Notes under the pieces: generated by a model
The model's database searches: none
What the model saw: the letters and a program-made list of their open reading frames with translations, nothing else
Told to the model about the DNA's origin: nothing
Shown: positions 6,896 through 24,949 of the stretch, in pieces
Position numbering within the stretch: position 1 is the first letter of the stretch
Layout: every line of letters starts with the position of its first letter
IMG/VR virus record: IMGVR_UViG_3300030616_000016
Span: 124,001-188,000 of that record
Length of the DNA: 64,000 bases
Strand: one strand, 5' to 3'
Translations under genes and position numbers: made by a program

Positions 6896-7194
6896 TCACC
6901 ATCCTCCTGTGGTTTGATAGTTATTTTGCCATCTAAACAAAAGTGTTTGCAGTTTTTTCTTCTACCTTTTATTGATTTACATAGTATATTTTTATATGCG
7001 TAGCAAACTGCAAAATAAGAAATATTCCACGCTGAAATACCCCATGCTGAAATGTCCCATGCTGAAATATTCTCTGCTGAAATATTTCTTGCTGAAATAT
7101 CCCCTGCTGAAATACTAAAACTAATATCAATGTCACAGCATATGCACACATCATCATCAATAACAGCAGTATTAGTTTTATCAACGTATTTCAA
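6892..7194 (-). CDS. Pentapeptide-like (ISAxx) repeat protein; start either TTG 7194 or ATG 7223 via -1 shift
   Basis: ISAGD ISARN ISAEN ISAWD ISAWG ISAWN (15-bp repeat); ends PQEDGE*. Confidence 0.65.
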   Translation of the reverse strand: MKYVDKTNTAVIDDDVCICCDIDISFSISAGDISARNISAENISAWDISAWGISAWNISYFAVCYAYKNILCKSIKGRRKNCKHFCLDGKITIKPQEDGE

Positions 7195-11598: not shown

Positions 11599-11730
11599 GT
11601 ATTGTTTCCTTTATAAGCGTATTTGTTTTCCTATGTAGGCGGTTGGCCCCAAAGCCACAAACCGCCGCACTTATTCTTTCATATTCCCAGAGAGTGAATT
11701 ACCTTGTAGGAATAACCTTTGTGAGCCATA

Positions 11731-11905
11731 GAAACCTAGATTAGCCTGTAGGAAGCTGGATTGGCTTGTAAAAAGTATGTAATTACTAGATGAGCTTGTG
11801 GAAAGCTAGATTAATCTATAGAAAGTCAGATTAACTTATAAAAAGTCAGATTAACTTATAAAAAGTCAGATTAACTTATAAAAAGTCAGATTAACTTATA
11901 AAAAG
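11731..11905. repeat. 20-bp tandem repeat, perfect on the right and degenerate on the left
   Basis: AAAAGTCAGATTAACTTATA x3 plus one G-variant (11821-11900), preceded by degenerate units from 11731. Confidence 0.9.
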
Positions 11906-12305
11906 TATGGTCACTGGCTCTCTCGTGTTCAGGAATTGCTGTTTCACAACCACAATTATTACAAGTATTTGTCACATCATTGTATCCACAGAACTTACAC
12001 TTGGCATATGTCATATCTTTAAGCCCAGGACATATATATCTATCCTTTATCCACTCGGCAATAGCCAAGATAGTAGTTCCATCGTGTAGTGAGCTTACAG
12101 CAGTTAATGGCTCGTGTAGAACCTTTTGATGTAGCAGGCCCTGGATCTTGTCATCTATGATGATTTTATTTGATCTGTCCTGCGGTTTTTTGTATGTTAA
12201 GATTGCGGGGCCGTATACAAACCATTCAAATGATATTTCGTGCTCCCAGTCTATCATTATTCTTCTTCCACTCTTTATGCATTCATTAATCTCATCAAGA
12301 GTCAT
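11886..12305 (-). CDS. Accessory protein with C-terminal zinc ribbon
   Basis: CKFCGYNDVTNTCNNCGC; paralog of 2885-3316. Confidence 0.75.
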   Translation of the reverse strand: MTLDEINECIKSGRRIMIDWEHEISFEWFVYGPAILTYKKPQDRSNKIIIDDKIQGLLHQKVLHEPLTAVSSLHDGTTILAIAEWIKDRYICPGLKDMTYAKCKFCGYNDVTNTCNNCGCETAIPEHERASDHTFYKLI

Positions 12306-13329: not shown

Positions 13330-13378
13330 TAAGAAAGTGAAAGAAATAGGAGATTTGGTGCCCCCCAAACACCAAATC
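13330..13378 (-). terminator. Probable intrinsic terminator closing the middle module
   Basis: 9-bp stem 13352-13360/13370-13378 followed on the minus strand by TCCTATTTCTTTCACTTTCTT. Confidence 0.55.
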
Positions 13379-13468
13379 ACCCTAAATCAAACCACATTGG
13401 AGGAGTGTCTTCACGCCGCTCATTAATTCAATTGGCACACTCTTTGCAATTAGAGTATACTAGATAGT

Positions 13469-13604
13469 AATCTACAAGATAAGCAATCTACAAGATAACC
13501 TATCTACAAGGTAACATAGTAGTCTTCTAGTAACACACCTATATTTATATATAGGTGTGTAATCTACAAGTAACTAGTCTATCTACAAGGTTGCAACCTT
13601 GTAG
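13469..13604. repeat. ATCTACAAG direct-repeat cluster with two palindromes
   Basis: Copies at 13470, 13486, 13502, 13562, 13581; 12-bp stem 13533-13560; perfect 22-bp palindrome 13583-13604. Confidence 0.9.
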
Positions 13605-13634
13605 GTAACGTCACCTCAAATTCTTTCTCTCCTG

Positions 13635-13728
13635 GGAGCCCATCACGCTACGCGTAAATTTGGAGCCCATCACTCGGCGCGTAAATGTACGCGCCAAGGT
13701 AGAAAGACCCCGGCGCGAAGCGCCGGGG
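13635..13728. repeat. 27-bp tandem duplication and two GC-rich hairpins
   Basis: GGAGCCCATCAC at 13635/13662; CGCGTAAAT at 13651/13678; GGCGCGTA-AATG-TACGCGCC; CCCCGGCGC-GAA-GCGCCGGGG. Confidence 0.75.
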
Positions 13729-13906
13729 CTTAATTCTTCTTCTTGATGAGATAGTAGCCTAGAGCGATAAGAATGACTGGTCCTATTGGGCTTAGACACA
13801 ATAATGCGCCTATTCCACCTAGGACTAGCCATTTATAGCTATCGTCGGTTGGCTGGGACTGCTCGTCTGTAACCTCATCATCTCCAACGAGCTTCTCCCA
13901 GCGCAC

Positions 13907-14500
13907 TTATCCCTCCTGTGGGATGAAGTTTGCCACCATAGAATTCAGGAGGCTCTTCTTCCTCTCGATTTCACCCTTCTCTGTCTTATAGGCTTCTTCG
14001 AGTTCCTTCTCCTCTTCAGCAATCTCTTTAATTGCTTGAGAGTGGAGGGTTTGTGCGGTATTTGCGAAGTCGGCGGGGCCATCAAAACGGTTGACCAGGG
14101 ATTTGAACCGGTCATAGCTGATACTGTATCTCTGCTCAAATGTCTCTTTGCTGGATTTGACAGCTTTCTCCAGCGCGCTAACTTCGTCCTGAACTTCACT
14201 CAGGGGTATGTCACAAAGAGCGAGCTTCTTGCGCTTCTCTTTGTTGCTTTTGATTGTGTTGCTGATTTCCTCAGCGTCTCGATGCGCGGCGCCGACATTC
14301 TTAACATTTACCAATGAGAGTACAGCGCTCTGCTTTGCTGTCTCTTTGGTTGCGGCCTGGCCGTTCTCGATTCCTGCTTTTGCGCCTGAGTACATGGAAG
14401 AGGGTATTGTTGCGGCTACGCTAGCCGTCTCACCCAGAAAGCTTCCAAGTCTCGCCGAAATTCCACTGATTGTACTGGTCCGTTTCTTTAACAGATTCAT
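13907..14500 (-). CDS. Coiled-coil hypothetical protein
   Basis: Long charged helical ORF with GGAGG SD. Confidence 0.7.
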   Translation of the reverse strand: MNLLKKRTSTISGISARLGSFLGETASVAATIPSSMYSGAKAGIENGQAATKETAKQSAVLSLVNVKNVGAAHRDAEEISNTIKSNKEKRKKLALCDIPLSEVQDEVSALEKAVKSSKETFEQRYSISYDRFKSLVNRFDGPADFANTAQTLHSQAIKEIAEEEKELEEAYKTEKGEIERKKSLLNSMVANFIPQEG

Positions 14501-14771
14501 TTTTGTTCCTCCGAAAATGTGGTTTTGATATAATTAAACTTACACAAGGTCCTGCTATTAAACCAGCTATACCGCCTGTGACTCCGCCGCACAGACCACC
14601 GACCATAGCAAGACCGATACTTAATCCCCAGTCGACAACACATCGACTTATGGCTCTACATTTGGCTTTAAAGCCTCGCGCCTGACCTATGGCTACCACA
14701 CGGTAACCCAATATAATTAAGCCAATTGCGCCAATTATTGCCAGCATTAATTGTATCATTTCATTCGCCAT
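14430..14771 (-). CDS. Membrane protein
   Basis: N-terminal TM and Gly-rich hydrophobic hairpin; AAGGA SD. Confidence 0.6.
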   Translation of the reverse strand: MANEMIQLMLAIIGAIGLIILGYRVVAIGQARGFKAKCRAISRCVVDWGLSIGLAMVGGLCGGVTGGIAGLIAGPCVSLIISKPHFRRNKNESVKETDQYNQWNFGETWKLSG

Positions 14772-14794
14772 TCCTTTCGCAGAAGAGTAAAAGA

Positions 14795-14963
14795 GACTTG
14801 TGGACAGGATTTGAGGACGAGGTTGGGACCGGTCTTATAGAGACCGATTTATTGCCAGGTCCTTGCCTGCAACTTCCCCTGTGGCATTTCGTAGAGGGAA
14901 GTACTGTCAGCATTAAGTCCGACATGCTGTACGTTGCCACGACGCATTGAGCCACCACAAGTC
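14795..14963. other. Multi-branched structured intergenic element
   Basis: Closing stem GACTTGTGG/CCACAAGTC enclosing CAGG/CCTG, CGGTCT/AGACCG and ACTTCCC/GGGAAGT helices. Confidence 0.55.
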
Positions 14964-15165
14964 ATTAATAATGAACGACTAACGGTTATCGGGCGTCATT
15001 TCTTTCTCCTTTCATCAAAGATGTTATTGCTTTCTAAAGTAAAAATCAATCCACAATACCAATATAACTAGACCCTATGATGCCCTCGTATGCTTGCGAG
15101 AAGGGGTCTATTTGGCAAAGTTATTTAAAAAGAGTGTTGGTACAATTTATGACTTATTTTTGTTA

Positions 15166-15194
15166 TTGACAGAAAAGAGGACTAATAGTATAAT
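15166..15194 (+). promoter_or_regulatory. Perfect sigma70/sigmaA promoter
   Basis: TTGACA (15166-15171), N17, TATAAT (15189-15194), upstream of the HNH gene. Confidence 0.9.
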
Positions 15195-15257
15195 ACTATA
15201 TCATAGTTTCACATATGAACTTCATATACTATTAGCCCTTTTTACATAAGGAGTGGT

Positions 15258-15650
15258 ATGATGGCATGGCAATGTACTGTTTATTCGCGTAGGGGCGACG
15301 AGAATCCCTTGCCTGAAAACTGGCATGAAATTAAACTTAATGTTGTTTTCAGAGATAGATTCACTTGTCAAATGTGTGGCAAGAAGTTCAAGTTTGAAGA
15401 ACTTGATGCGCATCATTTGAAACCCCGTTCTGAAGGAGGTACTAATAACATCAAGAATCTAATAACATTGTGTGAAGATTGTCATGATGTTGTTGAGGTC
15501 AATGGAATTCGCTACCGGGATATTATCAGGAATAAGCATAGACTGCAGCGAGACAGGCAAGAAAAACTTTATGAACTTAAGCATGGGAGCAAGAAATGCA
15601 AGAGAATCAAGAAGAAACCAATAGCGAACAAAGAGAACTGGCAGACATAG
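15258..15650 (+). CDS. HNH endonuclease
   Basis: RDRFTCQMCG...AHHLKPRSEGGTNNIKNLITLCEDCH; AAGGAG SD. Confidence 0.9.
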   Translation: MMAWQCTVYSRRGDENPLPENWHEIKLNVVFRDRFTCQMCGKKFKFEELDAHHLKPRSEGGTNNIKNLITLCEDCHDVVEVNGIRYRDIIRNKHRLQRDRQEKLYELKHGSKKCKRIKKKPIANKENWQT

Positions 15651-15853
15651 GTATACGGCGGATACAACCCTCCGTCGTAGAGCCGCTGCATATTTTACTC
15701 AACAAAGGTGTTACTAAATGGGTTATATCCAAGCGCGTTGGTGTTACGTGGCGTACCGTAAGATACTGGGAGCAAGGGTTTTCTGAACCTAAAGAGTTCA
15801 ATATGAAAGCCTTGTGGGATCTTGTAGATGAGGTTAATGAAGCAGGTGGCTGA
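15596..15853 (+). CDS. Small HTH (XRE-like) DNA-binding protein
   Basis: VISKRVGVTWRTVRYWEQGFSEP helix-turn-helix pattern. Confidence 0.65.
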   Translation: MQENQEETNSEQRELADIGIRRIQPSVVEPLHILLNKGVTKWVISKRVGVTWRTVRYWEQGFSEPKEFNMKALWDLVDEVNEAGG

Positions 15854-15911
15854 CACATACCATCCAGCACTCTCAATTATGTCCTTGAGTGTATCAGAGT
15901 CGTAGAATACC

Positions 15912-15968
15912 CTATTTGCGTTTGCTCCGTTTGAAGCGGTTCCTGGTTCTGCTGTGCCTCTTCTTCAT
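15912..15968 (-). CDS. Candidate 18-aa Arg/Lys-rich peptide
   Basis: MKKRHSRTRNRFKRSKRK*; purine-rich GGAAAGG upstream, inside the last helix of the structured array. Confidence 0.3.
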   Translation of the reverse strand: MKKRHSRTRNRFKRSKRK

Positions 15969-16458
15969 ACCCTTTCCACTTGTAAAATGAGAGGGAAGAG
16001 GTTAGCCGCCATCCGCCTCCTACACCAATCCCCTGACATACCCTCTCAAGTTAATAAAGGGGAGAGGGCTTTCTTGCTCCACGTCAGCCTCCAATGTTAG
16101 AGTTGGCCCAGCTGTACGTACCCTCTCTGAGAGCTTGCTACCATATTGGTGACTGTTGTGGTCGTCACCTTACCGCCCCCGATTCTATTACGATCCAACG
16201 CCCAAGGGTAGCAATTGGAAAGGTGAGAGACTTTCTTCCCACCACGCAATTAGCGTATCTCTCTGGGTGTAGTCTCTGATGAGATAAATCTACGACTGTA
16301 GGTGGGGCTAATAGTCCTACCTTGAGACGTTTAACGAATCATTCCAGACGTTGTGAAATTCCCATCAGGTGAGAGGCTTTGTTCGCCACGTACAGCCACC
16401 GGCGTTTATTCCGGATGTACACCTCAGTTAGTACTGAGTACGCTGTCCGTATCCTCTC
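15968..16458. ncRNA. Candidate structured ncRNA made of tandem repeats of a two-helix motif with variable inserts (strand unresolved)
   Basis: Plus-strand junctions AGG(T/G)GAGAGR-CTTT-N5-7-CCACG at 16058, 16221, 16367 and (CG)TA-Y-CYCTC at 16039, 16117, 16254, 16448, with complementary helices around inserts of very different length. Confidence 0.6.
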
Positions 16459-16474
16459 GTAGGCTCTGAGTTAC

Positions 16475-16696
16475 CTACTCAGCCGTTTTCGAATCCAAAT
16501 CGCAAGCAGCGATCTCTTCATCGGGCTGAGTTTCGCTAAGCTGTTTCTTGAGTTCAGCGATGGTTTTGTGGCTGGTGTCCAGATTGCTCTGGAGCTCGGA
16601 GATGGTCTGGTTTCGCTCTGTCAACGCCTTCTCCTGGTCCTTGTTTGTTTTGACCAGACGCTGACACTTCTGATGCAACATTTCACGCTTTGTCAT
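16475..16696 (-). CDS. Small coiled-coil protein
   Basis: Heptad-rich; AGGAG SD. Confidence 0.65.
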   Translation of the reverse strand: MTKREMLHQKCQRLVKTNKDQEKALTERNQTISELQSNLDTSHKTIAELKKQLSETQPDEEIAACDLDSKTAE

Positions 16697-16793
16697 GCTT
16701 GTCTCCTGTTAAAATAAAGTTGGTGTGTGAACCCGTATACGAACGTAAGTACACACGGGAATATTACATATAACCTACTTATTATAAGTAATG

Positions 16794-17174
16794 TCACGAT
16801 ACTGATTCAAGCTTCTTCTGAAGCTCATCAATTGTTGCGTAGATGCCCTTGGCATCATCATCAAAGCGACTCATCAGTCGCCTGAAGATTCTGTAGTTGA
16901 TGTTGAAGTCGTCCTTGAACACCCTCACCATCTTGTTTATTGCGAAACTGAATTGGAGCCGCATTGCCTTGTCACCAGACTTCTCAGCTTCCTCCATGCG
17001 GTTTAGGGCGTTGTCTATCTGACTCATGGCCAGAGCCGCTACTTCCAGGTGGGGTACTATTGACAGACGAGCAGCGGCGTGCTCCTTCTTTCCTTTAGCT
17101 ACATCGAACAGATTCATGTTACTCTCCTTGTCAAATATTGCTGGTGTTCTCTCCAATTCCCGAGGGTATTGCAT
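16794..17174 (-). CDS. Helical hypothetical protein
   Basis: AAGGAG SD before an internal ATG (MNLFD), which may be the true start. Confidence 0.65.
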   Translation of the reverse strand: MQYPRELERTPAIFDKESNMNLFDVAKGKKEHAAARLSIVPHLEVAALAMSQIDNALNRMEEAEKSGDKAMRLQFSFAINKMVRVFKDDFNINYRIFRRLMSRFDDDAKGIYATIDELQKKLESVS

Positions 17175-17349
17175 TTTATCTTTGTCGATTATTGCTATAA
17201 AATACGTAGATGGTAACGATCACAAGTCATTACCACCTACGTACCAGGAGAGAGTATATGGGCACCCACTATGTGGATGGCTATATATTATCTCCAAATA
17301 AAGGCGTAGGGCGCCCCATTAGGAGCAACCCTACACCGAGGTAAGTGCT

Positions 17350-17826
17350 TTAGATTTCGTTAGATACGAAGTCACTGGCACCTGAAGGAACTTCACTGGT
17401 CTGACGACGGGAGCGCCGTGAGCTCACCTGAGTAGGTGTGCGGGGAGCGCGTCCCTTGTTTTCAGGGTCACCAGCAGAAGCGACGACATTGGGAGCTTCC
17501 CCGTTTGCTACCTCTTCCAGGTTATCCACCGCGAAGACCTCAACGCGTTTGATGTCGTACTGACGTTTACCGTCAACACCGACTTCATAATCGCTGTACG
17601 GAGCGACGTTATTCTTAACGAAGCCCCACAGCTCGTTGAGTTTCTTCTTGCGGGTGGCGTTACCACTGATGATTGCCAGACCCTTGATTTCATCGACTTT
17701 GTTCACATCGACGTAGATTGCGTGCCTTTCTCCTACAAGCTTAACAGGCACGGCGTCTTCCAGAACTTCATTAAATCCCTGCGTCATATCGATAATCGGG
17801 CGCATTTTAGCGTCCTTTCTGCCCAA
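17350..17826 (-). CDS. Hypothetical protein with disordered C-terminal tail (possibly nucleic-acid binding)
   Basis: Beta-rich N-terminal ~100 aa, then a Pro/Ser/Arg tail ending ASDFVSNEI. Confidence 0.6.
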   Translation of the reverse strand: MGRKDAKMRPIIDMTQGFNEVLEDAVPVKLVGERHAIYVDVNKVDEIKGLAIISGNATRKKKLNELWGFVKNNVAPYSDYEVGVDGKRQYDIKRVEVFAVDNLEEVANGEAPNVVASAGDPENKGRAPRTPTQVSSRRSRRQTSEVPSGASDFVSNEI

Positions 17827-17988
17827 TGAAGGGCGTTAAGTTAAGTTTGGGCACAGAATGGACTGTACCCGTTAAGTGTCTGTCTGTTATACTCTTAGCA
17901 CGTGTCGCTTACGTTTGGTTTTGCGCACACGGTACTGTAGGGTATAGCGTAGTAATGAAACCACGCAACAAACAAAACCCAAAACACA

Positions 17989-18174
17989 CTATCCCTGTAC
18001 TATCCGTAGCACAGCTTGGTCGTGTTCAGGGTCGTCTTTTCTGATTCCAAGGGCTGTCTTTACGTCTTCGAGCTTATCGCCCTTGTACTTGTCATCATTA
18101 CGACGGTTGGCGTTTGCTATGTTACACTCAATCGCCTCTTTGTACCTCTGGTCCCGCGACTTTCTTGTTCTCAT
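17989..18174 (-). CDS. Small basic hypothetical protein
   Basis: AAGGAG SD. Confidence 0.55.
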   Translation of the reverse strand: MRTRKSRDQRYKEAIECNIANANRRNDDKYKGDKLEDVKTALGIRKDDPEHDQAVLRIVQG

Positions 18175-18195
18175 AACATTTCTCCTTAAAATGGT

Positions 18196-18552
18196 TCATG
18201 CCATATGAGGCTGATTATCCTCAATAAATTTCACCACCTTATCAAAGTCCAATGGTATTTCAGGTCTTCTGAGAGGAATATAATATATTTCCTTTCTCTG
18301 GTTATCAGAAATAACACCATGGGCAATTTCCATGTGACATTCTTTGCACTGGTCTACAATTAAGTCATTGCAAAACCTGCACACGAACCCGAATATGCGG
18401 TCTTTGCAGTGCCTGCACCTGATGTTTAGTGTTGGTAGCCTGTCTGGTAATGTTGACCTCATAACATTCTCCTTCAAATGGGTTAAGTACAAAGACCTTC
18501 CCTGATCTATAAGGGATTGAGACAGGTAAGGTTGGAGCGAGCCCGCGCTCAC
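18196..18552 (-). CDS. Cys-rich zinc-binding protein
   Basis: CRHC, CRFC, CKECH. Confidence 0.6.
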   Translation of the reverse strand: MSAGSLQPYLSQSLIDQGRSLYLTHLKENVMRSTLPDRLPTLNIRCRHCKDRIFGFVCRFCNDLIVDQCKECHMEIAHGVISDNQRKEIYYIPLRRPEIPLDFDKVVKFIEDNQPHMA

Positions 18553-18731
18553 TCCAAACCATCAATACAATCATAGTGAACCCTGTAGTCCACTATGCAC
18601 TGCTCAGACTCTGTGAGCGAGCTCATTCCAAAGAAATCCGCCCGCTCAAACAAATCCCCATACTCCTCACGGATGACGCCTTTGTCATCATCTGAGAGTG
18701 GCTTACTACAAACCGCGCATATGTTATCCAT
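18549..18731 (-). CDS. Small zinc-binding protein
   Basis: CAVC...HYDC; coupled to its neighbours. Confidence 0.55.
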   Translation of the reverse strand: MDNICAVCSKPLSDDDKGVIREEYGDLFERADFFGMSSLTESEQCIVDYRVHYDCIDGLE

Positions 18732-19000
18732 TAGTTATCTCCTTTACAAAGGTTATCTTTGAAGAATTTGTTGAGGACTTCACACGCTTTGTCGAACTTA
18801 TGTGTGGCTTTATCCAGTTCAGCCTGTGCGTAGTCGAGAGCCAGGCTGTACTCGTGCCACACCCAGTAACCCTCAACGTAATCCCGCGCCACTTCCTCAT
18901 CAACACCACACATTGCCACTACTACCTTGGTGGCGGTTTCTGTATCTTCAACCAGCGCCCGGATTATTTCATCAATCTTCGGTTGGTCATGTTCATTCAT
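18731..19000 (-). CDS. Hypothetical protein
   Basis: AAGGAG SD. Confidence 0.65.
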   Translation of the reverse strand: MNEHDQPKIDEIIRALVEDTETATKVVVAMCGVDEEVARDYVEGYWVWHEYSLALDYAQAELDKATHKFDKACEVLNKFFKDNLCKGDN

Positions 19001-19156
19001 TAGATTACTCCTTAAAATATGGTTGTTGTGAACTGGCGCGCCATTTCTTTATTCACGCCATAGGGACTGTCAGTACAATCCCGTAAAAATTACCGTCATA
19101 TACTGTTAGCGTTAAGATTCATTATAAAAAGATATTAGAACGGAGTATACAACAAT

Positions 19157-19233
19157 GCTACGCGTAGTTTGCGTAGCGACCTTTGTCGGTGCGTAGTTTG
19201 CACCGCGAGCCGGCAGATGTAGTTACTGCCGGC
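19157..19233. promoter_or_regulatory. Three adjacent hairpins with different stems and the same GTAGTT loop
   Basis: GCTACGC-GTAGTTT-GCGTAGC; CGGTGC-GTAGTTT-GCACCG; GCCGGCAG-ATGTAGTTA-CTGCCGGC. Confidence 0.65.
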
Positions 19234-19294
19234 GCGGAGTCGGCTTGCTCATTGGTTTACTCTGCTTGGCATTGGAACCGGAGCTTGGGGTAGG

Positions 19295-19453
19295 TTACGG
19301 AGTACCTACCTTGAAATGGGTGGTCATCCCCCGGCACCTTGGGCACCGGGAGACTTCCTTTATGTATATCTTACCGCAATTACTACACAGGGATCCTATC
19401 TTCCCCGCGTTCTCCTTCATATAATCATTAAGCTCATCTCTGAAGGACTTCAT
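19295..19453 (-). CDS. 52-aa zinc-ribbon protein (below ORF-track cutoff)
   Basis: MKSFRDELNDYMKENAGKIGSLCSNCGKIYIKEVSRCPRCRGMTTHFKVGTP*; ATGA-coupled to 19450-20034. Confidence 0.6.
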   Translation of the reverse strand: MKSFRDELNDYMKENAGKIGSLCSNCGKIYIKEVSRCPRCRGMTTHFKVGTP

Positions 19454-20034
19454 TCAGCACCTCCTTCGAAAAGCTGGTGGATCTTCTCGCTTTTTACTCT
19501 CTTGCCTGTGGTACAAGAGAATACAAAGGGCGCGCCATTTATTTCTACCTTAACATAGTGATGCTTGTTAAAGTATTTGGCCACCCTCTTGGTCACTACC
19601 TTGTGCTTGCAGTATGGCAACGATACTCTGTTGCCTTCCTTATCCAGAAGTTTCATGGTATTACCCGCCATCTTATAAAGCAGGTAATACTCTCCATTTA
19701 CCAGCTGGATAACAGGTATCTGTTTATCACCAAGTCTCTCCCGGAACTTGGTGATGCCTTCCCTCTTCTTCCCTCTTGCAAACAACTCTCTAATGCATCT
19801 GCTCGGGTCGTCACCCATGTCTGTTAACTGCTTGCTGACACGCATCTTATCGTCAGCAGTAGGTGCGGCTTGTATGGATTTGATAAATCCACTGCACACC
19901 CCGTGGGGCATACTCATTGCTGAGTATACCCCGTATTCGTTGCTGTGACGGACAAATGCCTTCTGTCTTGACAGGCGACGTATTTCAATGCGAACATTAT
20001 CTATTGTAAGAATCATTTCTTTCTCTCCTTGCAT
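19450..20034 (-). CDS. Basic hypothetical protein immediately downstream of the RNAP-like gene
   Basis: Co-oriented ORF with AAGGAG SD. Confidence 0.65.
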   Translation of the reverse strand: MQGEKEMILTIDNVRIEIRRLSRQKAFVRHSNEYGVYSAMSMPHGVCSGFIKSIQAAPTADDKMRVSKQLTDMGDDPSRCIRELFARGKKREGITKFRERLGDKQIPVIQLVNGEYYLLYKMAGNTMKLLDKEGNRVSLPYCKHKVVTKRVAKYFNKHHYVKVEINGAPFVFSCTTGKRVKSEKIHQLFEGGAE

Positions 20035-20040
20035 AAATGG

Positions 20041-22332
20041 TTAGAGGACGACCTTCTGGCCGACCATATTGAGAACTGCTTCTTCTTTGCTGACATACCA
20101 GCCAGCCTGCTTGCCGTCCTTGTGCAGCTCCACACTGTACCAGTCGGACTTACGATAAATCCGTTCTGGCTTAGCATGCACTTCCAGTTCTACTCCTTGC
20201 AGGTCACTTACTTGACCCTTGAATCCCCTCACGTCAATAAATCCATCAGGCACATAGGACTCATCAACATCAACAGCAAAGCGTGACTGGATATCACCAA
20301 TATACCTACCAAGAATGGTGATAAAGAACGTATTGCGCGTTCTAACTCCTTCATCGTTCCACCATTTCACTTTACCCTTGTCAGGCTTCTCTGACCAGGC
20401 GATGCGCATCATAGACCCGATGACATCGAGAGGGTTGTCCAGCGCTTCAACATAATCCAAGATCTCATCAGTAAGTGCTCTGAACTCATTTCTGATTTCT
20501 TTATCCTTGTCATCCGAAGTTAGCTCAGGGTCTTTCTTGATCTCGATTACATTTCTGATGGTATTGGACCTGGATTCCCATATAAACGCCCAGAGATCTT
20601 CTCCTTCTGGAGTGATATCAAACGCGTTTACATCGAACGGTGGCTTGGCCTCCATGTTTGTATCAGTGTATTTGGCCAGCTCAAGCTCATCCTGAATCTT
20701 GTCGAAGCCATTCAGGAACTTTGTCAGCTTGCATTTCTCAGCCATTTCGTAGGCCAGAAGCTTTTTAGGGAAAACTTCCGGCTTGCCATACTTATCAATC
20801 AATTTGTAGCCATATGCGACCAGATCTTTCTCGTCTTTCGATACTGGTCTGTTATCAATGACCTTGTGTTTGATATAACCAAGATCCTTGATCAACTTTG
20901 GATCGTCAAACCCATTGGTCAAAGACAGGCACTGTTGCACAAGATCAACACCGCCAATTGTGAGACCAGAATGAATGTCGATAAGCTGATGTGCAAGCTC
21001 GCGCAAGGCTTCATTCTTTGGTTTCGACAAGTCGATCTCCAGCTTCATTGGATCTTCATCGTCCAATGTTCTTTCTGGAGTCTGAGAGATATCCTGAGTC
21101 CATGAGAATGGCTTATGTTTATTTCCGTTCTCGTCTATCACAGTTAGGCCCATGACTTCAGAACTAGAGCCTATTGGTACTCTGAATGCCGCAGCTCCAC
21201 ATTCGACATACTCAGGATCGATGCCCCATATTTTCTTGAGCATCTCTGCGTTACGCGCTTTCATCTCCTCTGTGATTACGTGGAGTGTAAGTGTGTCTCC
21301 ATCACAGTCCGATGAAGTCCATCGCTCTATATTATCTATGGTCTTCTTGCTTGCAAGACCAAGGGTATACTTGTGCGTTCCAACAACCAACGCCATAAAG
21401 TCTTTCTTGCATCCTGTGAACTTTATGTTGCGCTCGTCCACCACAATGGTATTTGGCGGCAGGGTCTCATCACATATCATCATACCCTTGATGCCTTTGC
21501 CTTCATGGGCCATAGCAACACCAATCGCCATGATTTCATCATCGGAAGACTCAAGCTTGAGCTCATTTTCTTCTAGAGTCTCAGCGTCTTCTCTCCAGGC
21601 AATTGGATATGATCCGAATGCTGTTGCATACTGATTCTTCTTGTACGGCGCATCCATAAGCCTGTTCATCTCCTTATTGAACTCATAGAAGGCCACTGCG
21701 TCGTCGACTGATATCTCGAATGGGAAATGAGCCAGATTCTTGGCTACCCATTCTGGCGTGAGCCGCATATTGTCTATCTTATGCGCCCACTCGCATGTTG
21801 AAAGAACGTATGCTTTATTGAACTCGTTCTTTGTCTCTGCGGAAAGGTCGCTGCCGTAAATAGCCGTTGGATACTGCATCGGCAGCATAGACTGCTTCTG
21901 CTTATTTAAGGTTGTCCTTGCCGCTTCCTTTTTTACCTTCTTCCATACGTCTTTGCTTCCATGAATCAACCCATCTACGGTTCTAGCAATGATGACGTTG
22001 ATCGTCTTGCTATCCCAGTACGCTAACCTCCTGAGACTTTCATTAAGCATCCAAAGTATCCTTCTAAGATGCTTAACTCTTATGCGACCATCAACCATCG
22101 CCTGAGATGACTCAAACCACTTAGGTTGAGTCTTAAGGCCGAGATTATTATCGGGAACAAGGTCCCATTTGACCATATTCCAGACGATATCGTTAATGAC
22201 TTTTTCTCTGAGGCCTTTTTCTCTGCCTCTACCCACTGTCTTAGTCGACAATGACACAGGGAAATCTGCAGGCATGTCTGTCCTGCCAAGATCTCCTGCA
22301 TAGACTGTTTTGCTGCTTAACTTACACTTCAT
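20041..22332 (-). CDS. Candidate single-subunit two-barrel RNA polymerase (YonO / cellular-RdRP / crAss-like superfamily)
   Basis: GIKGMMICDETLPPNTIVVDERNIKF (K282) resembles the GxKG...I...KF segment of cellular RdRP-like enzymes. SSDCDGDTLTLH (D342-D346, nt 21309-21295) matches the DxDGD Mg-binding loop. Confidence 0.55.
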   Translation of the reverse strand: MKCKLSSKTVYAGDLGRTDMPADFPVSLSTKTVGRGREKGLREKVINDIVWNMVKWDLVPDNNLGLKTQPKWFESSQAMVDGRIRVKHLRRILWMLNESLRRLAYWDSKTINVIIARTVDGLIHGSKDVWKKVKKEAARTTLNKQKQSMLPMQYPTAIYGSDLSAETKNEFNKAYVLSTCEWAHKIDNMRLTPEWVAKNLAHFPFEISVDDAVAFYEFNKEMNRLMDAPYKKNQYATAFGSYPIAWREDAETLEENELKLESSDDEIMAIGVAMAHEGKGIKGMMICDETLPPNTIVVDERNIKFTGCKKDFMALVVGTHKYTLGLASKKTIDNIERWTSSDCDGDTLTLHVITEEMKARNAEMLKKIWGIDPEYVECGAAAFRVPIGSSSEVMGLTVIDENGNKHKPFSWTQDISQTPERTLDDEDPMKLEIDLSKPKNEALRELAHQLIDIHSGLTIGGVDLVQQCLSLTNGFDDPKLIKDLGYIKHKVIDNRPVSKDEKDLVAYGYKLIDKYGKPEVFPKKLLAYEMAEKCKLTKFLNGFDKIQDELELAKYTDTNMEAKPPFDVNAFDITPEGEDLWAFIWESRSNTIRNVIEIKKDPELTSDDKDKEIRNEFRALTDEILDYVEALDNPLDVIGSMMRIAWSEKPDKGKVKWWNDEGVRTRNTFFITILGRYIGDIQSRFAVDVDESYVPDGFIDVRGFKGQVSDLQGVELEVHAKPERIYRKSDWYSVELHKDGKQAGWYVSKEEAVLNMVGQKVVL

Positions 22333-22368
22333 ACTAATTCTCCTTAAAAGGGTGGTCTTGTTATAAGA

Positions 22369-22406
22369 GACAGGCTATATAGCGACCACTAACCATATAG
22401 CCTGTC
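22369..22406. other. 12-bp hairpin upstream of the RNAP-like gene
   Basis: GACAGGCTATAT / ATATAGCCTGTC with a 14-nt loop. Confidence 0.7.
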
Positions 22407-22419
22407 ATTGAATTAAGAT

Positions 22420-22722
22420 CTAGCGTCCGAGGCGCTTCCTCAGACTATTGATCTCGTTCTTGGCCTTACCGATGTCCTTGCCGAGATCCTTAATGATCTC
22501 AACGTACTGGTCGATGAACTCCTTGGTCTCTTCGCTATAAACCTCGAAGTTTCTGACAAACTCCTGATGGTGTTTGCGCTCCCTCTGCATCTGGCGCAAG
22601 TCCTTCTCCTTTTTCTGGAGCTCTTCCTCCAACTTGAGCACGGTCTTAGCCATGCTCTGATTTTTGTTATCCATGCTGCTTATGATCGCTTCTTTGAACT
22701 GAGCCATGTCTCCCAATTTCAT
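22420..22722 (-). CDS. Coiled-coil protein (start MKLGDM)
   Basis: GGAGAG SD; heptads. Confidence 0.65.
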   Translation of the reverse strand: MKLGDMAQFKEAIISSMDNKNQSMAKTVLKLEEELQKKEKDLRQMQRERKHHQEFVRNFEVYSEETKEFIDQYVEIIKDLGKDIGKAKNEINSLRKRLGR

Positions 22723-22846
22723 ATCTAACTCTCCTTCTGCCCTATTGGGCAATAGCGTATATAGAAGGCCCTATATAGGCCCTTGCCTATATAAGGGGTA
22801 GTACATATACGCCCTATGTACTACCTGTTTACACTGCATATAAGGT

Positions 22847-23002
22847 CTACCTATTAGACCTTGTTGTATAAGTACCCACATTACCCTTAATAAGGGCTTC
22901 TACACCATACCCAATAGTGTCGGACTTACGCGCATAGTGTTTATTGAGCACGCGCATATTGTGCTCATCAACAATCCTCTTAATCTGTTCTGCTCTACTC
23001 AT
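22847..23002 (-). CDS. 51-aa protein (below ORF-track cutoff)
   Basis: MSRAEQIKRIVDEHNMRVLNKHYARKSDTIGYGVEALIKGNVGTYTTRSNR*; AAGGAG SD. Confidence 0.55.
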   Translation of the reverse strand: MSRAEQIKRIVDEHNMRVLNKHYARKSDTIGYGVEALIKGNVGTYTTRSNR

Positions 23003-23012
23003 AATACTCTCC

Positions 23013-23132
23013 TTAATTACTATGGATTAACGGATATACGTACTCCAGTAGTACGTATAGGAATATGCACGCACATATTCCAAACAGTAGTCCCTTACAT
23101 ACTTCCTTGAGCCACTCCTTTGGCTTGTTCAC
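23013..23132 (-). CDS. 39-aa single-TM protein (start GTG 23132)
   Basis: AAGGAGGTG SD; hydrophobic core. Confidence 0.55.
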   Translation of the reverse strand: MNKPKEWLKEVCKGLLFGICACIFLYVLLEYVYPLIHSN

Positions 23133-23143
23133 TATACACCTCC

Positions 23144-23341
23144 TTAGATAAATGTTCCTGCTGTGTTGCACACCCACTGCAGGGCAACAATTGCCCCAAA
23201 CAGCATAGCACCAACCCATGCTATCCTTTCTACGTATGCATGAATATCATCTATCACACTGCTGCCCCACTCACAATTCATTACGAACGTGCACAATACA
23301 CCTATGCACAGACACACCACAAACGCTATTATATACTCCAT
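23144..23341 (-). CDS. Two-TM membrane protein (start MEYIIAF)
   Basis: GGAGGTG SD; two hydrophobic segments. Confidence 0.6.
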   Translation of the reverse strand: MEYIIAFVVCLCIGVLCTFVMNCEWGSSVIDDIHAYVERIAWVGAMLFGAIVALQWVCNTAGTFI

Positions 23342-23516
23342 ATCACACCTCCATATAAGCACTATTAATATATACTAATGAGCAACACACCCATTAGTAC
23401 TGATGATACAGTGCTATATATCACCATTCACTATATAGACCGCCTTATATAAGGAAGCCTATATAGTAAAGGTATACTATTTATATATGCGCCATATACC
23501 AGGGCGCTCATACATA

Positions 23517-23846
23517 TCACATATACACTGTTGTTTCTGGTTTATTGTGCTTGGTAAATTCATTCATCCCACCAAGCACCCTCCTTATCTGTCTGTTTGT
23601 ACCATTGCTAATCACCAGGTATACATATGACTCATGGTAGAAATCACCGTCGTAATCGTCAATAATTCTTACCTTGTACTCAACTACACGCCCGTTGCAC
23701 CATATACATCTCTGATACACATGTTCCAAGGAAGGTATATCTCTTACTACATCACCAACCACCAACCCCGTGGAGCTGTCAAAAAACTTACCTTCTACTG
23801 CTACATTGTTGCTATCTTTCACTGCATTAAGATTTGTGATCAACAT
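23517..23846 (-). CDS. Hypothetical protein, first gene of the leftward unit
   Basis: AGGAG SD. Confidence 0.6.
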   Translation of the reverse strand: MLITNLNAVKDSNNVAVEGKFFDSSTGLVVGDVVRDIPSLEHVYQRCIWCNGRVVEYKVRIIDDYDGDFYHESYVYLVISNGTNRQIRRVLGGMNEFTKHNKPETTVYM

Positions 23847-23956
23847 AATGATCTCCTTTGCCCATCGGGCTAAAAGTTTTTATTTTCTTTCTCTATAAGC
23901 ACCCCGGTACCGTGCATCGACCAATGCACATCATAAGTACCGAGAAATATCAACCA

Positions 23957-24062
23957 TCATCCACCCTTGTGTCTTACAAATCTTCCACCCTTAAGACCTT
24001 ATATTTTCTTCCACTCTTGTGTTTCATGAATTATCCACCCTTGAAAATTATATATATAATAT
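23957..24062. repeat. Four 12-bp direct repeats resembling DnaA boxes/iterons, followed by an AT tract
   Basis: TCATCCACCCTT 23957, TCTTCCACCCTT 23981, TCTTCCACTCTT 24007, TTATCCACCCTT 24031, then AAAATTATATATATAATAT. Confidence 0.8.
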
Positions 24063-24329
24063 GCACATAGTGCTGCTGCAGCGTGTCAACAAGAGCTTGA
24101 CGGCAAGCCCGCCCCTCTTAAAAATAACACTCCAAGACGCCGCCGCCCCATTACATAAAAATGCAACCTAGTAGCTGAGCTACTGTTCATCATAGATAAA
24201 CTTCAAGAAAGACCCCCCGGTACCGCATATATACACTCCCGCATAACAACCTATTCATGCCCCCAAAAATATATATAATATACACTTCACACTCCCTGAG
24301 TGTTATTCTTGAATATTTTATTATTACAA

Positions 24330-24357
24330 TTGAATTCATAACCAATTATGCTATAAT
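24330..24357 (+). promoter_or_regulatory. Sigma70/sigmaA-type promoter with extended -10
   Basis: TTGAAT-N16-TATAAT with TG at -15/-14 (TGCTATAAT). Confidence 0.7.
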
Positions 24358-24391
24358 TACTACTGATTGATTTAACAGGAGGAATACAATA

Positions 24392-24949
24392 TTGGCTTGT
24401 TTATATATAGAAGCAGGAGCAAACAGAGGTAGGTCAGCAAAGCGGTTTTATAAGCAACACAAAGACATTAACTTCGAGTATCACCTTTTTGAGGCTAATC
24501 CTAATATCATTGCAGACCTTAACAGTTCAGTGGTATGTATTCAAGGCGAGCGCACTATTTATAACAAAGCCGTATGGACTGAAAATGATATTGAAATGGA
24601 AATCAAGATAGATAAGACGACCAAGGGGTCAACTATCTGTGAGAAGAGTGTTAGAGTGAATGAGACGGCGGTTACGTCCACAATAGACTTTGATGAATGG
24701 TTCAGGGCCTGTTGTAAAGAAGATGATTATATTGTCCTTGTTATTGATATAGAAGGCGCGGAATATGAAGTTCTTCCAAAGATGATTGATAACGGGTGCT
24801 TTGACATGGTAGACGAGCTTACAATCGAATTTCATGGTCATAAAATGAAGAATAAAAAATTCACATCCGATATGAATAAATTGTTTAGGGATTATTTTAA
24901 TACAATGAAGTTCAATAAGTGCGAATTGTATTTTATAGACAAAATTTGA
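24392..24949 (+). CDS. FkbM-family SAM-dependent methyltransferase
   Basis: YIEAGANRG, LFEANP, KAVW, LVIDIEGAEYEVL, ELTIEFH; AGGAGG SD, TTG start. Confidence 0.8.
   Translation: MACLYIEAGANRGRSAKRFYKQHKDINFEYHLFEANPNIIADLNSSVVCIQGERTIYNKAVWTENDIEMEIKIDKTTKGSTICEKSVRVNETAVTSTIDFDEWFRACCKEDDYIVLVIDIEGAEYEVLPKMIDNGCFDMVDELTIEFHGHKMKNKKFTSDMNKLFRDYFNTMKFNKCELYFIDKI

What the first reader, a model, noticed from the sequence alone, without database searches (positions are those of the whole stretch)
13330..24390. A compositionally distinct ~11-kb module bracketed by repeat clusters: terminal repeat or first-injected segment?
Seen: spot-counted lines are about 50% GC here versus roughly 35-40% in the left arm. 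Genes are separated by structured gaps rather than overlaps. The block starts at the strand switch (repeats at 23901-24285) and ends at a repeat/palindrome cluster (13469-13728) plus a terminator. Known: T5 and SPO1 carry host-takeover genes in long terminal repeats, and the T5 injection-stop region is rich in direct repeats and palindromes. Inference: this may be a collapsed long terminal repeat carrying the early RNAP.
Basis: inference. Interest (0 to 1): 0.6.

Follow-up and report, generated by a model that had tools for sequence, protein, structure and literature searches.

The report
GC-rich early-gene module of jumbo phage
This is the first ~10 kb of the leftward gene arm of a new, uncultured 232-kb phage distantly related to Bacillus phage 0305phi8-36: a block of tiny unknown genes separated by RNA hairpins, with unusually GC-rich synonymous sites, lying where the relative carries its terminal repeat; whether it is itself a collapsed terminal repeat could not be tested.

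Summary
Window 13.3-24.4 kb is the most GC-rich 11-kb stretch of a 231,647-bp phage contig, at 0.448 against 0.381 (not ~50%). The excess sits at synonymous sites: GC3 is 0.51 against 0.30. The left edge is sharp (~13,630), inside a repeat and terminator cluster. The right edge is soft (~22,660). Coding density is 67%, and most gaps fold into strong hairpins.

The phage is a distant relative of Bacillus phage 0305phi8-36. That phage's 6.5-kb terminal repeat, putative RNA polymerase gene and 'host-takeover-like' small ORFs lie in the same position, against the strand switch into the virion genes. I read the block as that kind of early module.

Position and terminase kinship favour it. However, raised GC3 is not a repeat hallmark in 0305phi8-36, and similar repeat clusters occur elsewhere nearby.

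The 'early RNAP' (763 aa) belongs to a three-member orphan family. It has a DxDGD motif and a weak language-model lead to RdRP/YonO-type enzymes. It has no profile support, the R-x-P motif is misplaced, and the triad is broken in one member.

The parts
23847..24391 (.). Divergent control region between the first leftward gene (start codon at 23846) and the first rightward gene (24392)
   Evidence: ORF layout and sequence. The alignment with relative L006 shows conserved non-coding footprints.
24330..24357 (+). Sigma-70-type promoter facing the virion-gene arm: TTGAAT, a 16-nt spacer, then TATAAT with a TG extension. The AT-rich box at 24269-24285 lies upstream.
   Evidence: Promoter scan. The -10 box, the -35 box and the upstream box are conserved in L006 and L007.
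23900..23930 (-). Conserved ~30-nt element TGTGCATTGGTCGATGCACGGTACCGGGGTG (a small hairpin plus a GGTACC palindrome), ~55-85 nt upstream of the first leftward gene
   Evidence: Nearly identical in L006 and L007. CCCCGGTACCG occurs only twice in the genome.
24213..24225 (-). Second copy of the CGGTACCGGGGGG element, 313 bp from the first
   Evidence: L006 also has two copies, 272 bp apart.
23956..24043 (+). Four direct TCCACCCTTG-like repeats spaced ~24-25 nt apart. Likely binding sites for a regulator.
   Evidence: At the same place L006 has different short repeats (CTATGGAAA twice).
22420..23846 (-). Five small promoter-proximal ORFs of 109, 65, 68, 51 and 100 aa, separated by hairpin spacers
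   Evidence: ORFs with Shine-Dalgarno sites. No Pfam or PHROG match. GC3 0.42-0.74.
22333..23516 (-). Three spacers (22333-22419, 22723-22846, 23342-23516) made of tandem perfect hairpins carrying (C/T)TATATAG(G/C)C
   Evidence: Folding z-scores of -4.4, -3.2 and -5.3. The motif is enriched: 5 of 14 genomic copies lie in the block, against 0.7 expected.
20041..22332 (-). P0001, a 763-aa protein of an orphan family with invariant D342/D344/D346 (SDCDGDTLTLH), GTH 318-320 and R384-x-P386. Candidate, not shown, for a very divergent two-barrel RNA polymerase.
   Evidence: Only two relatives among 1.84 billion representative proteins. Alignment A1. Atlas lead to RdRP/PF05183 clusters at 0.89. Negative tests. 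Fold failed with pLDDT 35.
16475..20016 (-). Ten short ORFs (188, 52, 89, 60, 88, 61, 151, 107 and 73 aa among them), mostly separated by structured gaps. Two are small zinc-ribbon-like proteins.
   Evidence: The 151-aa ORF (17350-17805) has a homologue in L008 and L009. The 52-aa and 60-aa ORFs have homologues in L006. Gap folding z-scores are -4.0 and -8.0.
15258..15650 (+). Free-standing HNH endonuclease on the opposite strand, with a perfect TTGACA-17-TATAAT promoter at 15166-15194. It lies in a local low-GC pocket.
   Evidence: PF01844 at E 1e-14 and many PHROG HNH families. Promoter. GC 0.397 in 15-16 kb.
15877..16474 (-). ~600 nt with no credible ORF, next to the HNH gene. Possibly a gene remnant or an insertion scar.
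   Evidence: ORF list. No Rfam match. Folding z is only -1.5.
13730..14759 (-). The last three genes of the block: a 109-aa small membrane protein, a 197-aa Gly/Ser-rich and coiled-coil-like protein, and a 58-aa ORF
   Evidence: The 109-aa and 197-aa ORFs have collinear homologues in L008 and L009. No family match.
13708..13728 (.). 9-bp all-GC hairpin (CCCCGGCGC-GAA-GCGCCGGGG), an intrinsic terminator closing the block's transcription unit
   Evidence: Terminator scan. Fold energy -23.8 kcal/mol, z -2.5. The composition change-point at ~13,630 lies next to it.
13466..13686 (.). Repeat cluster: five direct copies and one inverted copy of (A/T)TCTACAAG (13466-13607), a 26-nt palindrome (13535-13560), and a 25-nt tandem pair GGAGCCCATCAC..GCGCGTAAAT (13635-13686)
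   Evidence: It is among the ~16 densest short-repeat clusters of the genome.

Best explanation
The block is the promoter-proximal ~10.5 kb of the leftward gene arm of a new 0305phi8-36-like jumbo phage. I read it as an early, host-takeover-type module.

SHOWN
- It begins at a divergent control region that is partly conserved in a relative.
- It consists of ~18 very short orphan genes plus one 763-aa gene, all on the minus strand.
- Most genes are separated by strong RNA hairpins.
- A mobile HNH endonuclease gene interrupts it.
- It ends at a strong intrinsic terminator followed by an iteron-like repeat cluster.
- It carries a regional rise in G+C at synonymous sites, and the same contrast is seen in a relative.

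INFERRED
- By analogy with 0305phi8-36 and SPO1, these genes are the first to be expressed after DNA entry.
- The hairpins would cut the arm into short transcripts, acting as terminators or processing sites.
- The terminator and repeat cluster at 13.4-13.7 kb would mark the end of the early unit. It may also be a regulatory, replication or repeat-boundary site.
- The 763-aa protein may be the counterpart of the relative's YonO-like RNA polymerase.

A long terminal repeat, if this phage has one like its relative, would be expected to start in the divergent region and cover some or all of this block.
For: KINSHIP AND SYNTENY
- The major capsid protein is ~31% identical to that of 0305phi8-36.
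- gp112, gp115, TerL, portal, protease and the capsid protein are collinear.
- In 0305phi8-36 the leftward genes next to the same strand switch are the terminal repeat (ORF101-107), then gp100, then the gp99 RNA polymerase, then small ORFs.
- PMC2147016 describes these as monocistronic, compares them with the SPO1 host-takeover region, and infers that this end enters the cell first.

ANATOMY
- Short ORFs with Shine-Dalgarno sites.
- 67.5% coding.
- Hairpin excess: 33 against 10.1 expected.
- Gap folding z of -3.2 to -8.0.
- A terminator at 13,708-13,728, beside the composition change-point at 13,630.

MODULE CONSERVATION
- L006 and L007 show the same order: strand switch, tiny genes, P0002, then a small gene.
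- L008 and L009 carry P0003 followed by homologues of the 151-aa, 109-aa and 197-aa ORFs in the same order.

COMPOSITION
- GC3 is 0.51 against 0.30.
- L006 shows the same contrast, 0.49-0.59 against 0.24-0.38.
Against: - No expression data exist, so timing is inferred only from position and organisation.
- Sigma-70-type promoters are not enriched in the block (32 found, 30.8 expected). The SPO1 model would predict enrichment.
- No gene in the block matches a known host-takeover protein or any known family, apart from HNH.
- No 0305phi8-36 repeat gene or gp99 has a detectable homologue here.
- The GC3 shift is unexplained. It is a plain rise in both C3 and G3, with no within-class resemblance to the capsid gene's codon choice (r = -0.06). 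It also touches intergenic DNA (0.42 against 0.36). Codon-level selection for early translation is therefore not specifically supported.
Confidence: 0.6

Rival explanations
1. Collapsed long direct terminal repeat. The virion DNA would be linear with a multi-kb repeat that starts in the divergent region near 23.9-24.3 kb and extends leftward. The assembler would have merged the two copies. The strict version puts the edges at ~13.5 and ~24.3 kb. The looser version is a shorter repeat, such as ~6 kb as in 0305phi8-36, covering only the switch-proximal part. This does not exclude the early-module reading.
For: - The 0305phi8-36 repeat lies at exactly the syntenic place, all leftward genes, ending 84 bp upstream of the first leftward gene.
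- Its distal edge lies in a 775-bp gap rich in repeats, much like 13.4-13.7 kb here.
- TerL's only relatives are in the 0305phi8-36 group. The one member with mapped ends has a non-permuted genome with a 6.479-kb repeat (PMC3357382).
- The contig begins and ends in one 24-nt tandem repeat. The assembly is therefore a closed circle broken at a repeat, as expected for a collapsed repeat, although also for a permuted genome.
Against: - No read depth or read-start data.
- The GC3 anomaly is not a repeat feature in 0305phi8-36.
- Three similar repeat arrays lie within 7 kb (7.0, 11.8 and 13.5 kb), so the boundary choice is arbitrary.
- TerL identity is only ~30%.
- The two mapped ends of 0305phi8-36 share no motif that could be transferred to this genome.
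- In 0305phi8-36 the polymerase gene is outside the repeat.
Confidence: 0.35
2. Horizontally acquired island. The block would be foreign DNA from a higher-GC phage, and its composition would be a leftover of that origin.
For: - The GC excess is at synonymous sites and also in spacers.
- Homologues of four block genes lie on GC-53% contigs (L008, L009), one of them from the same metagenome.
- The P0001 tree disagrees with virion-gene kinship. P0002 and P0003 are 37% identical, but P0001 is 23-24% identical to both. L006's virion proteins are 54-70% identical to this phage's.
- A mobile HNH gene sits inside the block.
Against: - L006 shows the same GC3 contrast at the same place.
- Protein identities are so low (23-46%) that synonymous sites are long saturated. 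A transferred composition would have decayed, so something must maintain it.
- The module sits at the same position in the relative.
Confidence: 0.15
3. Short terminal repeat. The physical ends would lie in the divergent region. The ~313 bp between the two CCCCGGTACCG elements (23,902 and 24,215) would be a T7- or N4-sized direct terminal repeat. The block would then simply be the first-entering early arm.
For: - The element occurs exactly twice in 231 kb, in direct orientation.
- It occurs twice again, 272 bp apart, in L006 and L007, with conserved flanks.
- The 0305phi8-36 repeat end lies in the equivalent intergenic region.
Against: - The only mapped relative has a 6.5-kb repeat.
- The elements may equally be operators or promoter parts.
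- No read data.
- The element is absent from 0305phi8-36 and the other fetched relatives.
Confidence: 0.1
4. T5-like first-step-transfer segment. Only this block would enter the cell first, and injection would pause at the repeat and palindrome cluster at 13.4-13.7 kb until block-encoded proteins are made.
For:
- Small membrane proteins are encoded at the distal end.
Against: - No homologue of any T5 pre-early protein or any known family.
- The phage is a 0305phi8-36-like myovirus, not T5-like.
- Similar repeat arrays occur elsewhere.
- It is not testable in silico.
Confidence: 0.05

Closest known systems
Right-end region of Bacillus phage 0305phi8-36 (NC_009760): the 6,479-bp terminal repeat (ORF101-107), gp100, gp99 (YonO/RdRP-like putative RNA polymerase) and the small monocistronic ORFs at 202-208 kb
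   Same: - Same position relative to a collinear virion module (gp112, TerL, portal, protease, capsid protein).
- All genes are leftward from the same strand switch.
- Many short orphan ORFs with promoter-sized or structured spacers.
- One large gene among them.
- A repeat-rich non-coding gap at the distal repeat edge (PMC2147016).
   Different: - No detectable sequence homology for any gene of the block.
- The large gene is 763 aa here, against 1,218 aa, and is not recognisably PF05183.
- It lies ~2 kb from the switch rather than beyond a 6.5-kb repeat.
- 0305phi8-36 shows no GC3 rise there.
- A repeat is proven there and untested here.
SPO1 host-takeover module in its terminal redundancy, and the T5 pre-early region in its long terminal repeat
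   Same: A cluster of short early-type genes at or next to a genome end, with many intergenic signals.
   Different: - No homology.
- The strong sigma-A-type promoters in front of each gene that are typical of SPO1 are not enriched here.
- Terminal location is unproven.
- It belongs to a different phage lineage.
Two-barrel single-chain RNA polymerases (YonO of SPbeta, 0305phi8-36 gp99, QDE-1/RdRP family PF05183)
   Same: - P0001 has SDCDGDTLTLH, which resembles the beta-prime motif ADFDGDQMAVH.
- The three Asp are invariant in alignment A1.
- The nearest language-model clusters are RdRP/PF05183 clusters, one of them viral.
- It has a comparable genomic position to gp99.
   Different: - No significant match to PF05183, to PDB chains, or to a gp99 plus YonO-like profile.
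- The invariant R-x-P lies ~40 residues after the triad, rather than ~33 before it as PMC2919709 describes.
- P0002 reads ADGDD.
- The fold could not be obtained.

Membership tests
Long direct terminal repeat collapsed in an assembly | About twofold read depth over the repeat, with sharp edges | not testable with these tools
Long direct terminal repeat collapsed in an assembly | Fixed read starts or ends at the two boundaries | not testable with these tools
   Same reason.
Long direct terminal repeat collapsed in an assembly | Large terminase related to those of phages that package fixed-end genomes with long repeats | tested here: met
   TerL's only relatives are in the 0305phi8-36 group (~30% identity in both exteins). 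0305phi8-36 is non-permuted with a 6.479-kb repeat (PMC3357382). This is weak, because only one relative has mapped ends.
Long direct terminal repeat collapsed in an assembly | Assembly closes on itself, so the contig ends are not physical ends | tested here: met
   Both contig ends lie in the same 24-nt tandem repeat. IMG/VR finds no end repeats. This is also expected for a permuted genome.
Two-barrel RNA polymerase (YonO / gp99 / QDE-1, PF05183) | Invariant DxDxD triad in the beta-prime-like barrel | tested here: inconclusive
   P0001 has DCDGD and P0003 has DMDGD, but P0002 has ADGDD.
Two-barrel RNA polymerase (YonO / gp99 / QDE-1, PF05183) | Invariant R-x-P about 33 residues upstream of the triad (PMC2919709) | tested here: not met
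   The family's invariant R384-x-P386 lies ~40 residues downstream of D342-D346. Upstream there is only an invariant GTH.
Two-barrel RNA polymerase (YonO / gp99 / QDE-1, PF05183) | Second barrel with an invariant Asp and two Lys | tested here: inconclusive
   An invariant GKGxK (278-282) lies 60 residues before the triad. Its equivalence cannot be judged without a structure.
Two-barrel RNA polymerase (YonO / gp99 / QDE-1, PF05183) | Significant sequence or profile similarity to the family | tested here: not met
   - Pfam at E up to 10: none.
- PF05183 against this genome alone: none.
- hhalign against gp99 plus the YonO-like protein: probability 0.8%.
- BLASTP against gp99: only E 2.2 at the motif.
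- Atlas score 0.89, a lead only.
T7-type single-subunit RNA polymerase (PF00940) | Match to the polymerase domain | tested here: not met
   No Pfam or PHROG match for P0001.
SPO1 / 0305phi8-36-type host-takeover early module | Cluster of short ORFs, each with its own spacer, next to the genome end or strand switch | tested here: met
   Precedent in PMC2147016.
SPO1 / 0305phi8-36-type host-takeover early module | Strong host-type promoters in front of the genes (SPO1) | tested here: not met
   32 sigma-70-like sites against 30.8 expected. None lies in front of the leftward genes.
SPO1 / 0305phi8-36-type host-takeover early module | Expression immediately after infection | not testable with these tools
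   The phage is uncultured and comes from a metagenome. No RNA data could be reached.
T5 first-step-transfer region | Homologues of T5 pre-early proteins | tested here: not met
   No PHROG or Pfam match for any block protein except HNH.
Group I intron carrying a homing endonuclease | Intron RNA core next to the HNH gene, splitting a host gene | tested here: not met
   No Rfam match even at E <= 1. Fold z is -1.5. The HNH gene is on the opposite strand with its own promoter.

The most novel reading that the evidence does not exclude
The block would be the terminally repeated, first-entering segment of a new jumbo-phage lineage, and P0001 would found a new, very compact branch of two-barrel RNA polymerases. 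In that branch the order of the catalytic motifs would be rearranged (triad before R-x-P). The enzyme would transcribe the hairpin-punctuated early genes. The maintained synonymous-site GC rise would be a DNA-level adaptation of the segment that meets the host first, for example to evade AT-targeted silencing or nucleases, or as a result of recombination-driven GC bias in the repeat.
Probability: 0.08. Interest if true: 0.8.

Novelty: new member of a known kind. Interest (0 to 1): 0.4.

Why it matters
The 0305phi8-36 lineage of jumbo phages is sparsely sampled, and only one member has mapped genome ends. This uncultured relative shows that the layout next to the virion genes is conserved even though every gene in it has changed beyond recognition. 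That layout is a strand switch followed by a run of tiny genes with one large enzyme-sized gene.

Two features could be worth follow-up:
- A synonymous-site GC island that is maintained in two phages whose early proteins are only ~24% identical. That implies a local force acting on the DNA or RNA of early genes.
- An orphan 750-aa protein family (three members among 1.84 billion representatives) that may or may not be a new kind of RNA polymerase.

Neither is established here. The terminal-repeat question is ordinary and would be settled at once by read mapping.

Tried and rejected
1. tRNA or ncRNA cluster as the cause of high GC and 'structured gaps'. There are no tRNAs or Rfam families in the window. 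The phage's 21 tRNAs lie at genome 23-36 kb.
2. T7-type RNA polymerase: no match.
3. Fold of P0001: pLDDT 35 from a 3-sequence alignment. It is unusable, so no fold search was run.
4. Enlarging the P0001 family. The word search with P0001 and with A1 found nothing. The viral and metagenome scans returned only the genome itself and an identical 4.5-kb fragment.
5. hhalign, PF05183 and PDB profile tests of the polymerase idea: all negative.
6. Group I intron around the HNH gene: rejected.
7. Contig ends of the relatives as physical ends. L006 and L007 stop at the same place, but in a low-complexity AACACTA-type repeat, so this is an assembly break.
8. A transferable cut-site motif from the mapped 0305phi8-36 ends: none is shared between its two boundaries.
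9. The conserved control-region element in other viral contigs: none found.
10. Solitary CRISPR-repeat-like 37-mer as a host clue. The exact search found nothing. The degenerate search hit eight Lachnospiraceae genomes, but each hit is single-copy with period-3 variation. That is one conserved coding gene, not arrays, so the lead was rejected.
11. Translational selection as the cause of the GC3 rise: no within-class agreement with the capsid gene.
12. KLEB27-3 gp277 (746 aa) as a P0001 or gp99 relative: no similarity.
14. Further relatives through the conserved 1,230-aa neighbour gene: none in IMG/VR.
15. Atlas search for the 197-aa partner protein: no usable hit.

Full report
WHAT THE WINDOW IS

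The window is bases 124,001-188,000 of a single 231,647-bp contig. This is an IMG/VR virus record (Ga0272442_10000021), classed 'linear' with no end repeats and an estimated 95% completeness. Mean GC is 0.381.

Both contig ends lie inside the same 24-nt tandem repeat, (AAGTAGTAGTTCATCTAATTCTTC)n. The ends are therefore assembly breakpoints in a closed circle, not physical termini. The genome has no repeat longer than ~550 bp.

The major capsid protein is ~31% identical to that of Bacillus jumbo phage 0305phi8-36. Homologues of gp112, gp115, TerL, portal, protease and the capsid protein are collinear with that phage. TerL and portal each carry large insertions here. TerL has relatives only in the 0305phi8-36 group.

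CHECKING THE OBSERVATION

Composition:
- The block (13,330-24,390) has GC 0.448. The left arm of the window has 0.374 and the right arm 0.415.
- It is the highest of all equal-sized windows of the genome, but it is not ~50%.
- The excess is concentrated at third codon positions. GC3 is 0.51 for 18 block genes, against 0.30, 0.34 and 0.29 for the left arm, the virion genes and the rest. GC1 and GC2 are ordinary. Eight of the ten highest-GC3 genes of the genome are in the block.
- Gene by gene, the island runs from 13,730 to ~23,340.
- A likelihood change-point puts the left edge at ~13,630 (strong) and the right edge at ~22,660 (weak).

Gaps:
- The block is 67.5% coding, against ~90% for the genome.
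- Terminator-like hairpins are three times more frequent than in shuffles (33 against 10.1 +/- 2.9). Sigma-70-type promoters are not enriched (32 against 30.8).
- Five of eight inter-gene gaps tested fold far better than shuffles (z -3.2 to -8.0), with tandem perfect hairpins of 11-20 bp. The stretch around the terminator folds with z -2.5. Two gaps do not differ from shuffles.
- The gaps between the first small genes carry (C/T)TATATAG(G/C)C in their stems. Five of the 14 genomic copies lie in the block, against 0.7 expected.

Bracketing clusters:
- At 13,466-13,728 there are about six (A/T)TCTACAAG copies, a palindrome, a 25-nt tandem pair and a 9-bp all-GC hairpin terminator.
- At 23,900-24,285 there are four TCCACCCTTG-like repeats, two CCCCGGTACCG copies (the only two in the genome) and two AT-rich boxes.
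- The left cluster is not unique. Arrays of 15-nt and 20-nt units lie at 7,019-7,123 and 11,700-11,930.

WHAT IS IN THE BLOCK

There are no tRNAs and no Rfam families. All credible genes but one are on the minus strand. They comprise about 18 short ORFs of 51-197 aa and one of 763 aa (P0001), most with Shine-Dalgarno sites.

None matches Pfam or PHROGs, apart from weak zinc-ribbon and coiled-coil signals. The exception is a plus-strand HNH endonuclease (15,258-15,650; PF01844 at 1e-14) with a perfect TTGACA-17-TATAAT promoter. It lies beside ~600 nt without an ORF. That stretch is neither an intron nor significantly structured.

RELATIVES OF THE MODULE

An exhaustive search of 1.84 billion representative proteins found only two relatives of P0001: P0002 (750 aa, E 6e-15) and P0003 (736 aa, E 4e-9).

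P0002 lies in a relative whose virion-side proteins are 54-70% identical to this phage's. The layout there is the same: TerL, then the 1,209-, 283-, 65- and 119-aa genes, the strand switch, three tiny genes, P0002, then a 68-aa gene.

The divergent regions of the two phages share several footprints:
- A sigma-70-type promoter facing the virion genes.
- Two CGGTACCGGGG elements. One of them sits inside a 30-nt nearly identical hairpin element, 55-85 nt upstream of the first leftward gene.
- The short direct repeats between these elements differ between the phages, as co-evolving regulator sites would.

P0003 lies on GC-53% contigs, one of them from the same metagenome. It is followed in the same order by homologues of the 151-, 109- and 197-aa ORFs of the block. 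The block is therefore a conserved collinear module.

It evolves fast or is exchanged. P0002 and P0003 are 37% identical, but P0001 is only 23-24% identical to either.

THE COMPOSITION ANOMALY

L006 shows the same GC3 contrast, 0.49-0.59 in its leftward genes against 0.24-0.38 in its virion genes. At ~24% protein identity, synonymous sites are saturated. The bias must therefore be maintained and cannot be a leftover of a recent transfer.

It is not a terminal-repeat property in this lineage. The 0305phi8-36 repeat genes have GC3 of 0.30-0.40, like the rest of that genome, and WH1 shows nothing either.

Block genes avoid the A-ending codons served by the phage's own 21 tRNAs. However, the shift is a plain rise of both C3 and G3. 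Once GC3 is factored out it has no resemblance to the capsid gene's codon choice (r = -0.06). It also reaches the spacers (0.42 against 0.36). It looks like a regional DNA-level effect, and its cause remains unexplained.

THE 'EARLY RNAP'

In favour:
- P0001 contains SDCDGDTLTLH, which resembles the beta-prime motif ADFDGDQMAVH. D342, D344 and D346 are invariant in the three-member alignment.
- The language-model atlas places it nearest to clusters named RNA-dependent RNA polymerase, including a viral cluster with PF05183. The score of 0.89 is below the tool's own line.

Against:
- No Pfam, PHROG, PDB or profile match, even at permissive thresholds or against this genome alone.
- hhalign against gp99 plus a YonO-like protein gives 0.8% probability.
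- The invariant R-x-P lies after the triad, whereas the family definition puts it ~33 residues before (PMC2919709).
- P0002 reads ADGDD.
- The fold failed, with pLDDT 35.

I put the polymerase reading at about one in three.

THE TERMINAL-REPEAT HYPOTHESIS

In 0305phi8-36 the 6,479-bp repeat holds ORF101-107, all leftward. It ends 84 bp upstream of the first leftward gene, next to the same strand switch. Beyond it lie gp100, gp99 (a putative RNA polymerase) and small ORFs.

The authors of PMC2147016 describe those small ORFs as monocistronic and compare them with the 11.5-kb SPO1 host-takeover region. They conclude that this end must enter the cell first. The distal repeat edge of 0305phi8-36 lies in a repeat-rich 775-bp gap.

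By position and by terminase kinship, a long repeat overlapping the block is therefore plausible. I put it at about 0.35. An exact fit to 13.5-24.3 kb is nearer 0.1.

The decisive test is read depth and read starts.

Other routes gave nothing:
- The two mapped ends of 0305phi8-36 share no motif.
- The relatives' contig ends are repeat-induced breaks.
- Other relatives' records carry no repeat annotation.
- No further relatives exist in the viral collection.

An alternative worth testing with the same reads is a short ~313-bp repeat bounded by the two CCCCGGTACCG copies.

VERDICT

The block is best read as the early, host-takeover-type module of a new 0305phi8-36-like jumbo phage. That makes it a new member of a known kind of region. 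Its extras are a maintained synonymous-site GC island and an orphan enzyme-sized protein family.

Its general interpretation has a precedent in this lineage. Its specific claims remain untested (a collapsed repeat with these edges) or unsupported (an RNA polymerase).

Noticed in passing
window 18487-18523 (-): A single 37-nt sequence, GUCUCAAUCCCUUAUAGAUCAGGGAAGGUCUUUGUAC, resembles Rfam CRISPR-DR54 (25.7 bits against a gathering score of 39; E 0.12). It lies in the gap between two small ORFs and could be a solitary repeat unit. A search of bacterial genomes gave no arrays. The eight Lachnospiraceae hits were one conserved coding gene.
   Followed up: yes
window 31776-34877 (TerL) and 37320-40316 (portal): Compared with their 0305phi8-36 homologues, both genes carry large in-frame insertions: ~1.4 kb at 32,513-33,942 and ~1.1 kb at 38,381-39,444. 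The portal insertion has a LAGLIDADG domain, so these are probably inteins.
   Followed up: partly
window 7019-7123 and 11700-11930: Non-coding tandem arrays, 15-nt units (..CTGCTGAAATA..) in about seven copies and 20-nt units (AGATTAACTTATAAAAAGTC) in about ten. They flank two paralogous DUF6745 genes (7580-8800 and 10483-11598) that share a 546-bp stretch at 78% identity.
   Followed up: partly
genome C1:1-126 and 231534-231647: The contig starts and ends in the same 24-nt tandem repeat, so the assembly is a circle broken at that repeat.
   Followed up: yes
genome C1:23384-35625 (-), outside the window: There are 21 tRNA genes, mostly with U34 anticodons for A-ending codons. Block genes avoid exactly those codons (TTA, CTA, CAA, AAA, AGA, GAA).
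   Followed up: partly
L008 and L009 (GC 53%); L009 is from the same metagenome as the window: A much more GC-rich phage contig carries P0003 and four further genes, collinear with the block ORFs at 17350-17805, 14430-14759 and 13907-14500 and with the left-arm ORF at 1317-1790. It lacks the ~12 kb that separates them here.
   Followed up: partly
window 22333-23516 (-): Hairpins whose stems contain (C/T)TATATAG(G/C)C recur between the first leftward genes. The motif is about 7-fold enriched in the block. Its role (terminator, processing site or phage-specific promoter) is unknown.
   Followed up: partly
window 15166-15650 (+) and 15877-16474: A free-standing HNH endonuclease with a consensus promoter sits in a low-GC pocket of the block, next to ~600 nt without an ORF. 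It looks like a mobile insertion and is absent from the collinear module in L008.
   Followed up: yes
window 5714-6175 (-): A 153-aa pentapeptide-repeat protein (PF00805, E 4e-12) in the left arm.
   Followed up: no
window 24392-24949 (+): The first gene of the rightward arm is an FkbM-type methyltransferase (PF05050, E 1e-7). It starts with TTG behind a strong AGGAGG site.
   Followed up: no
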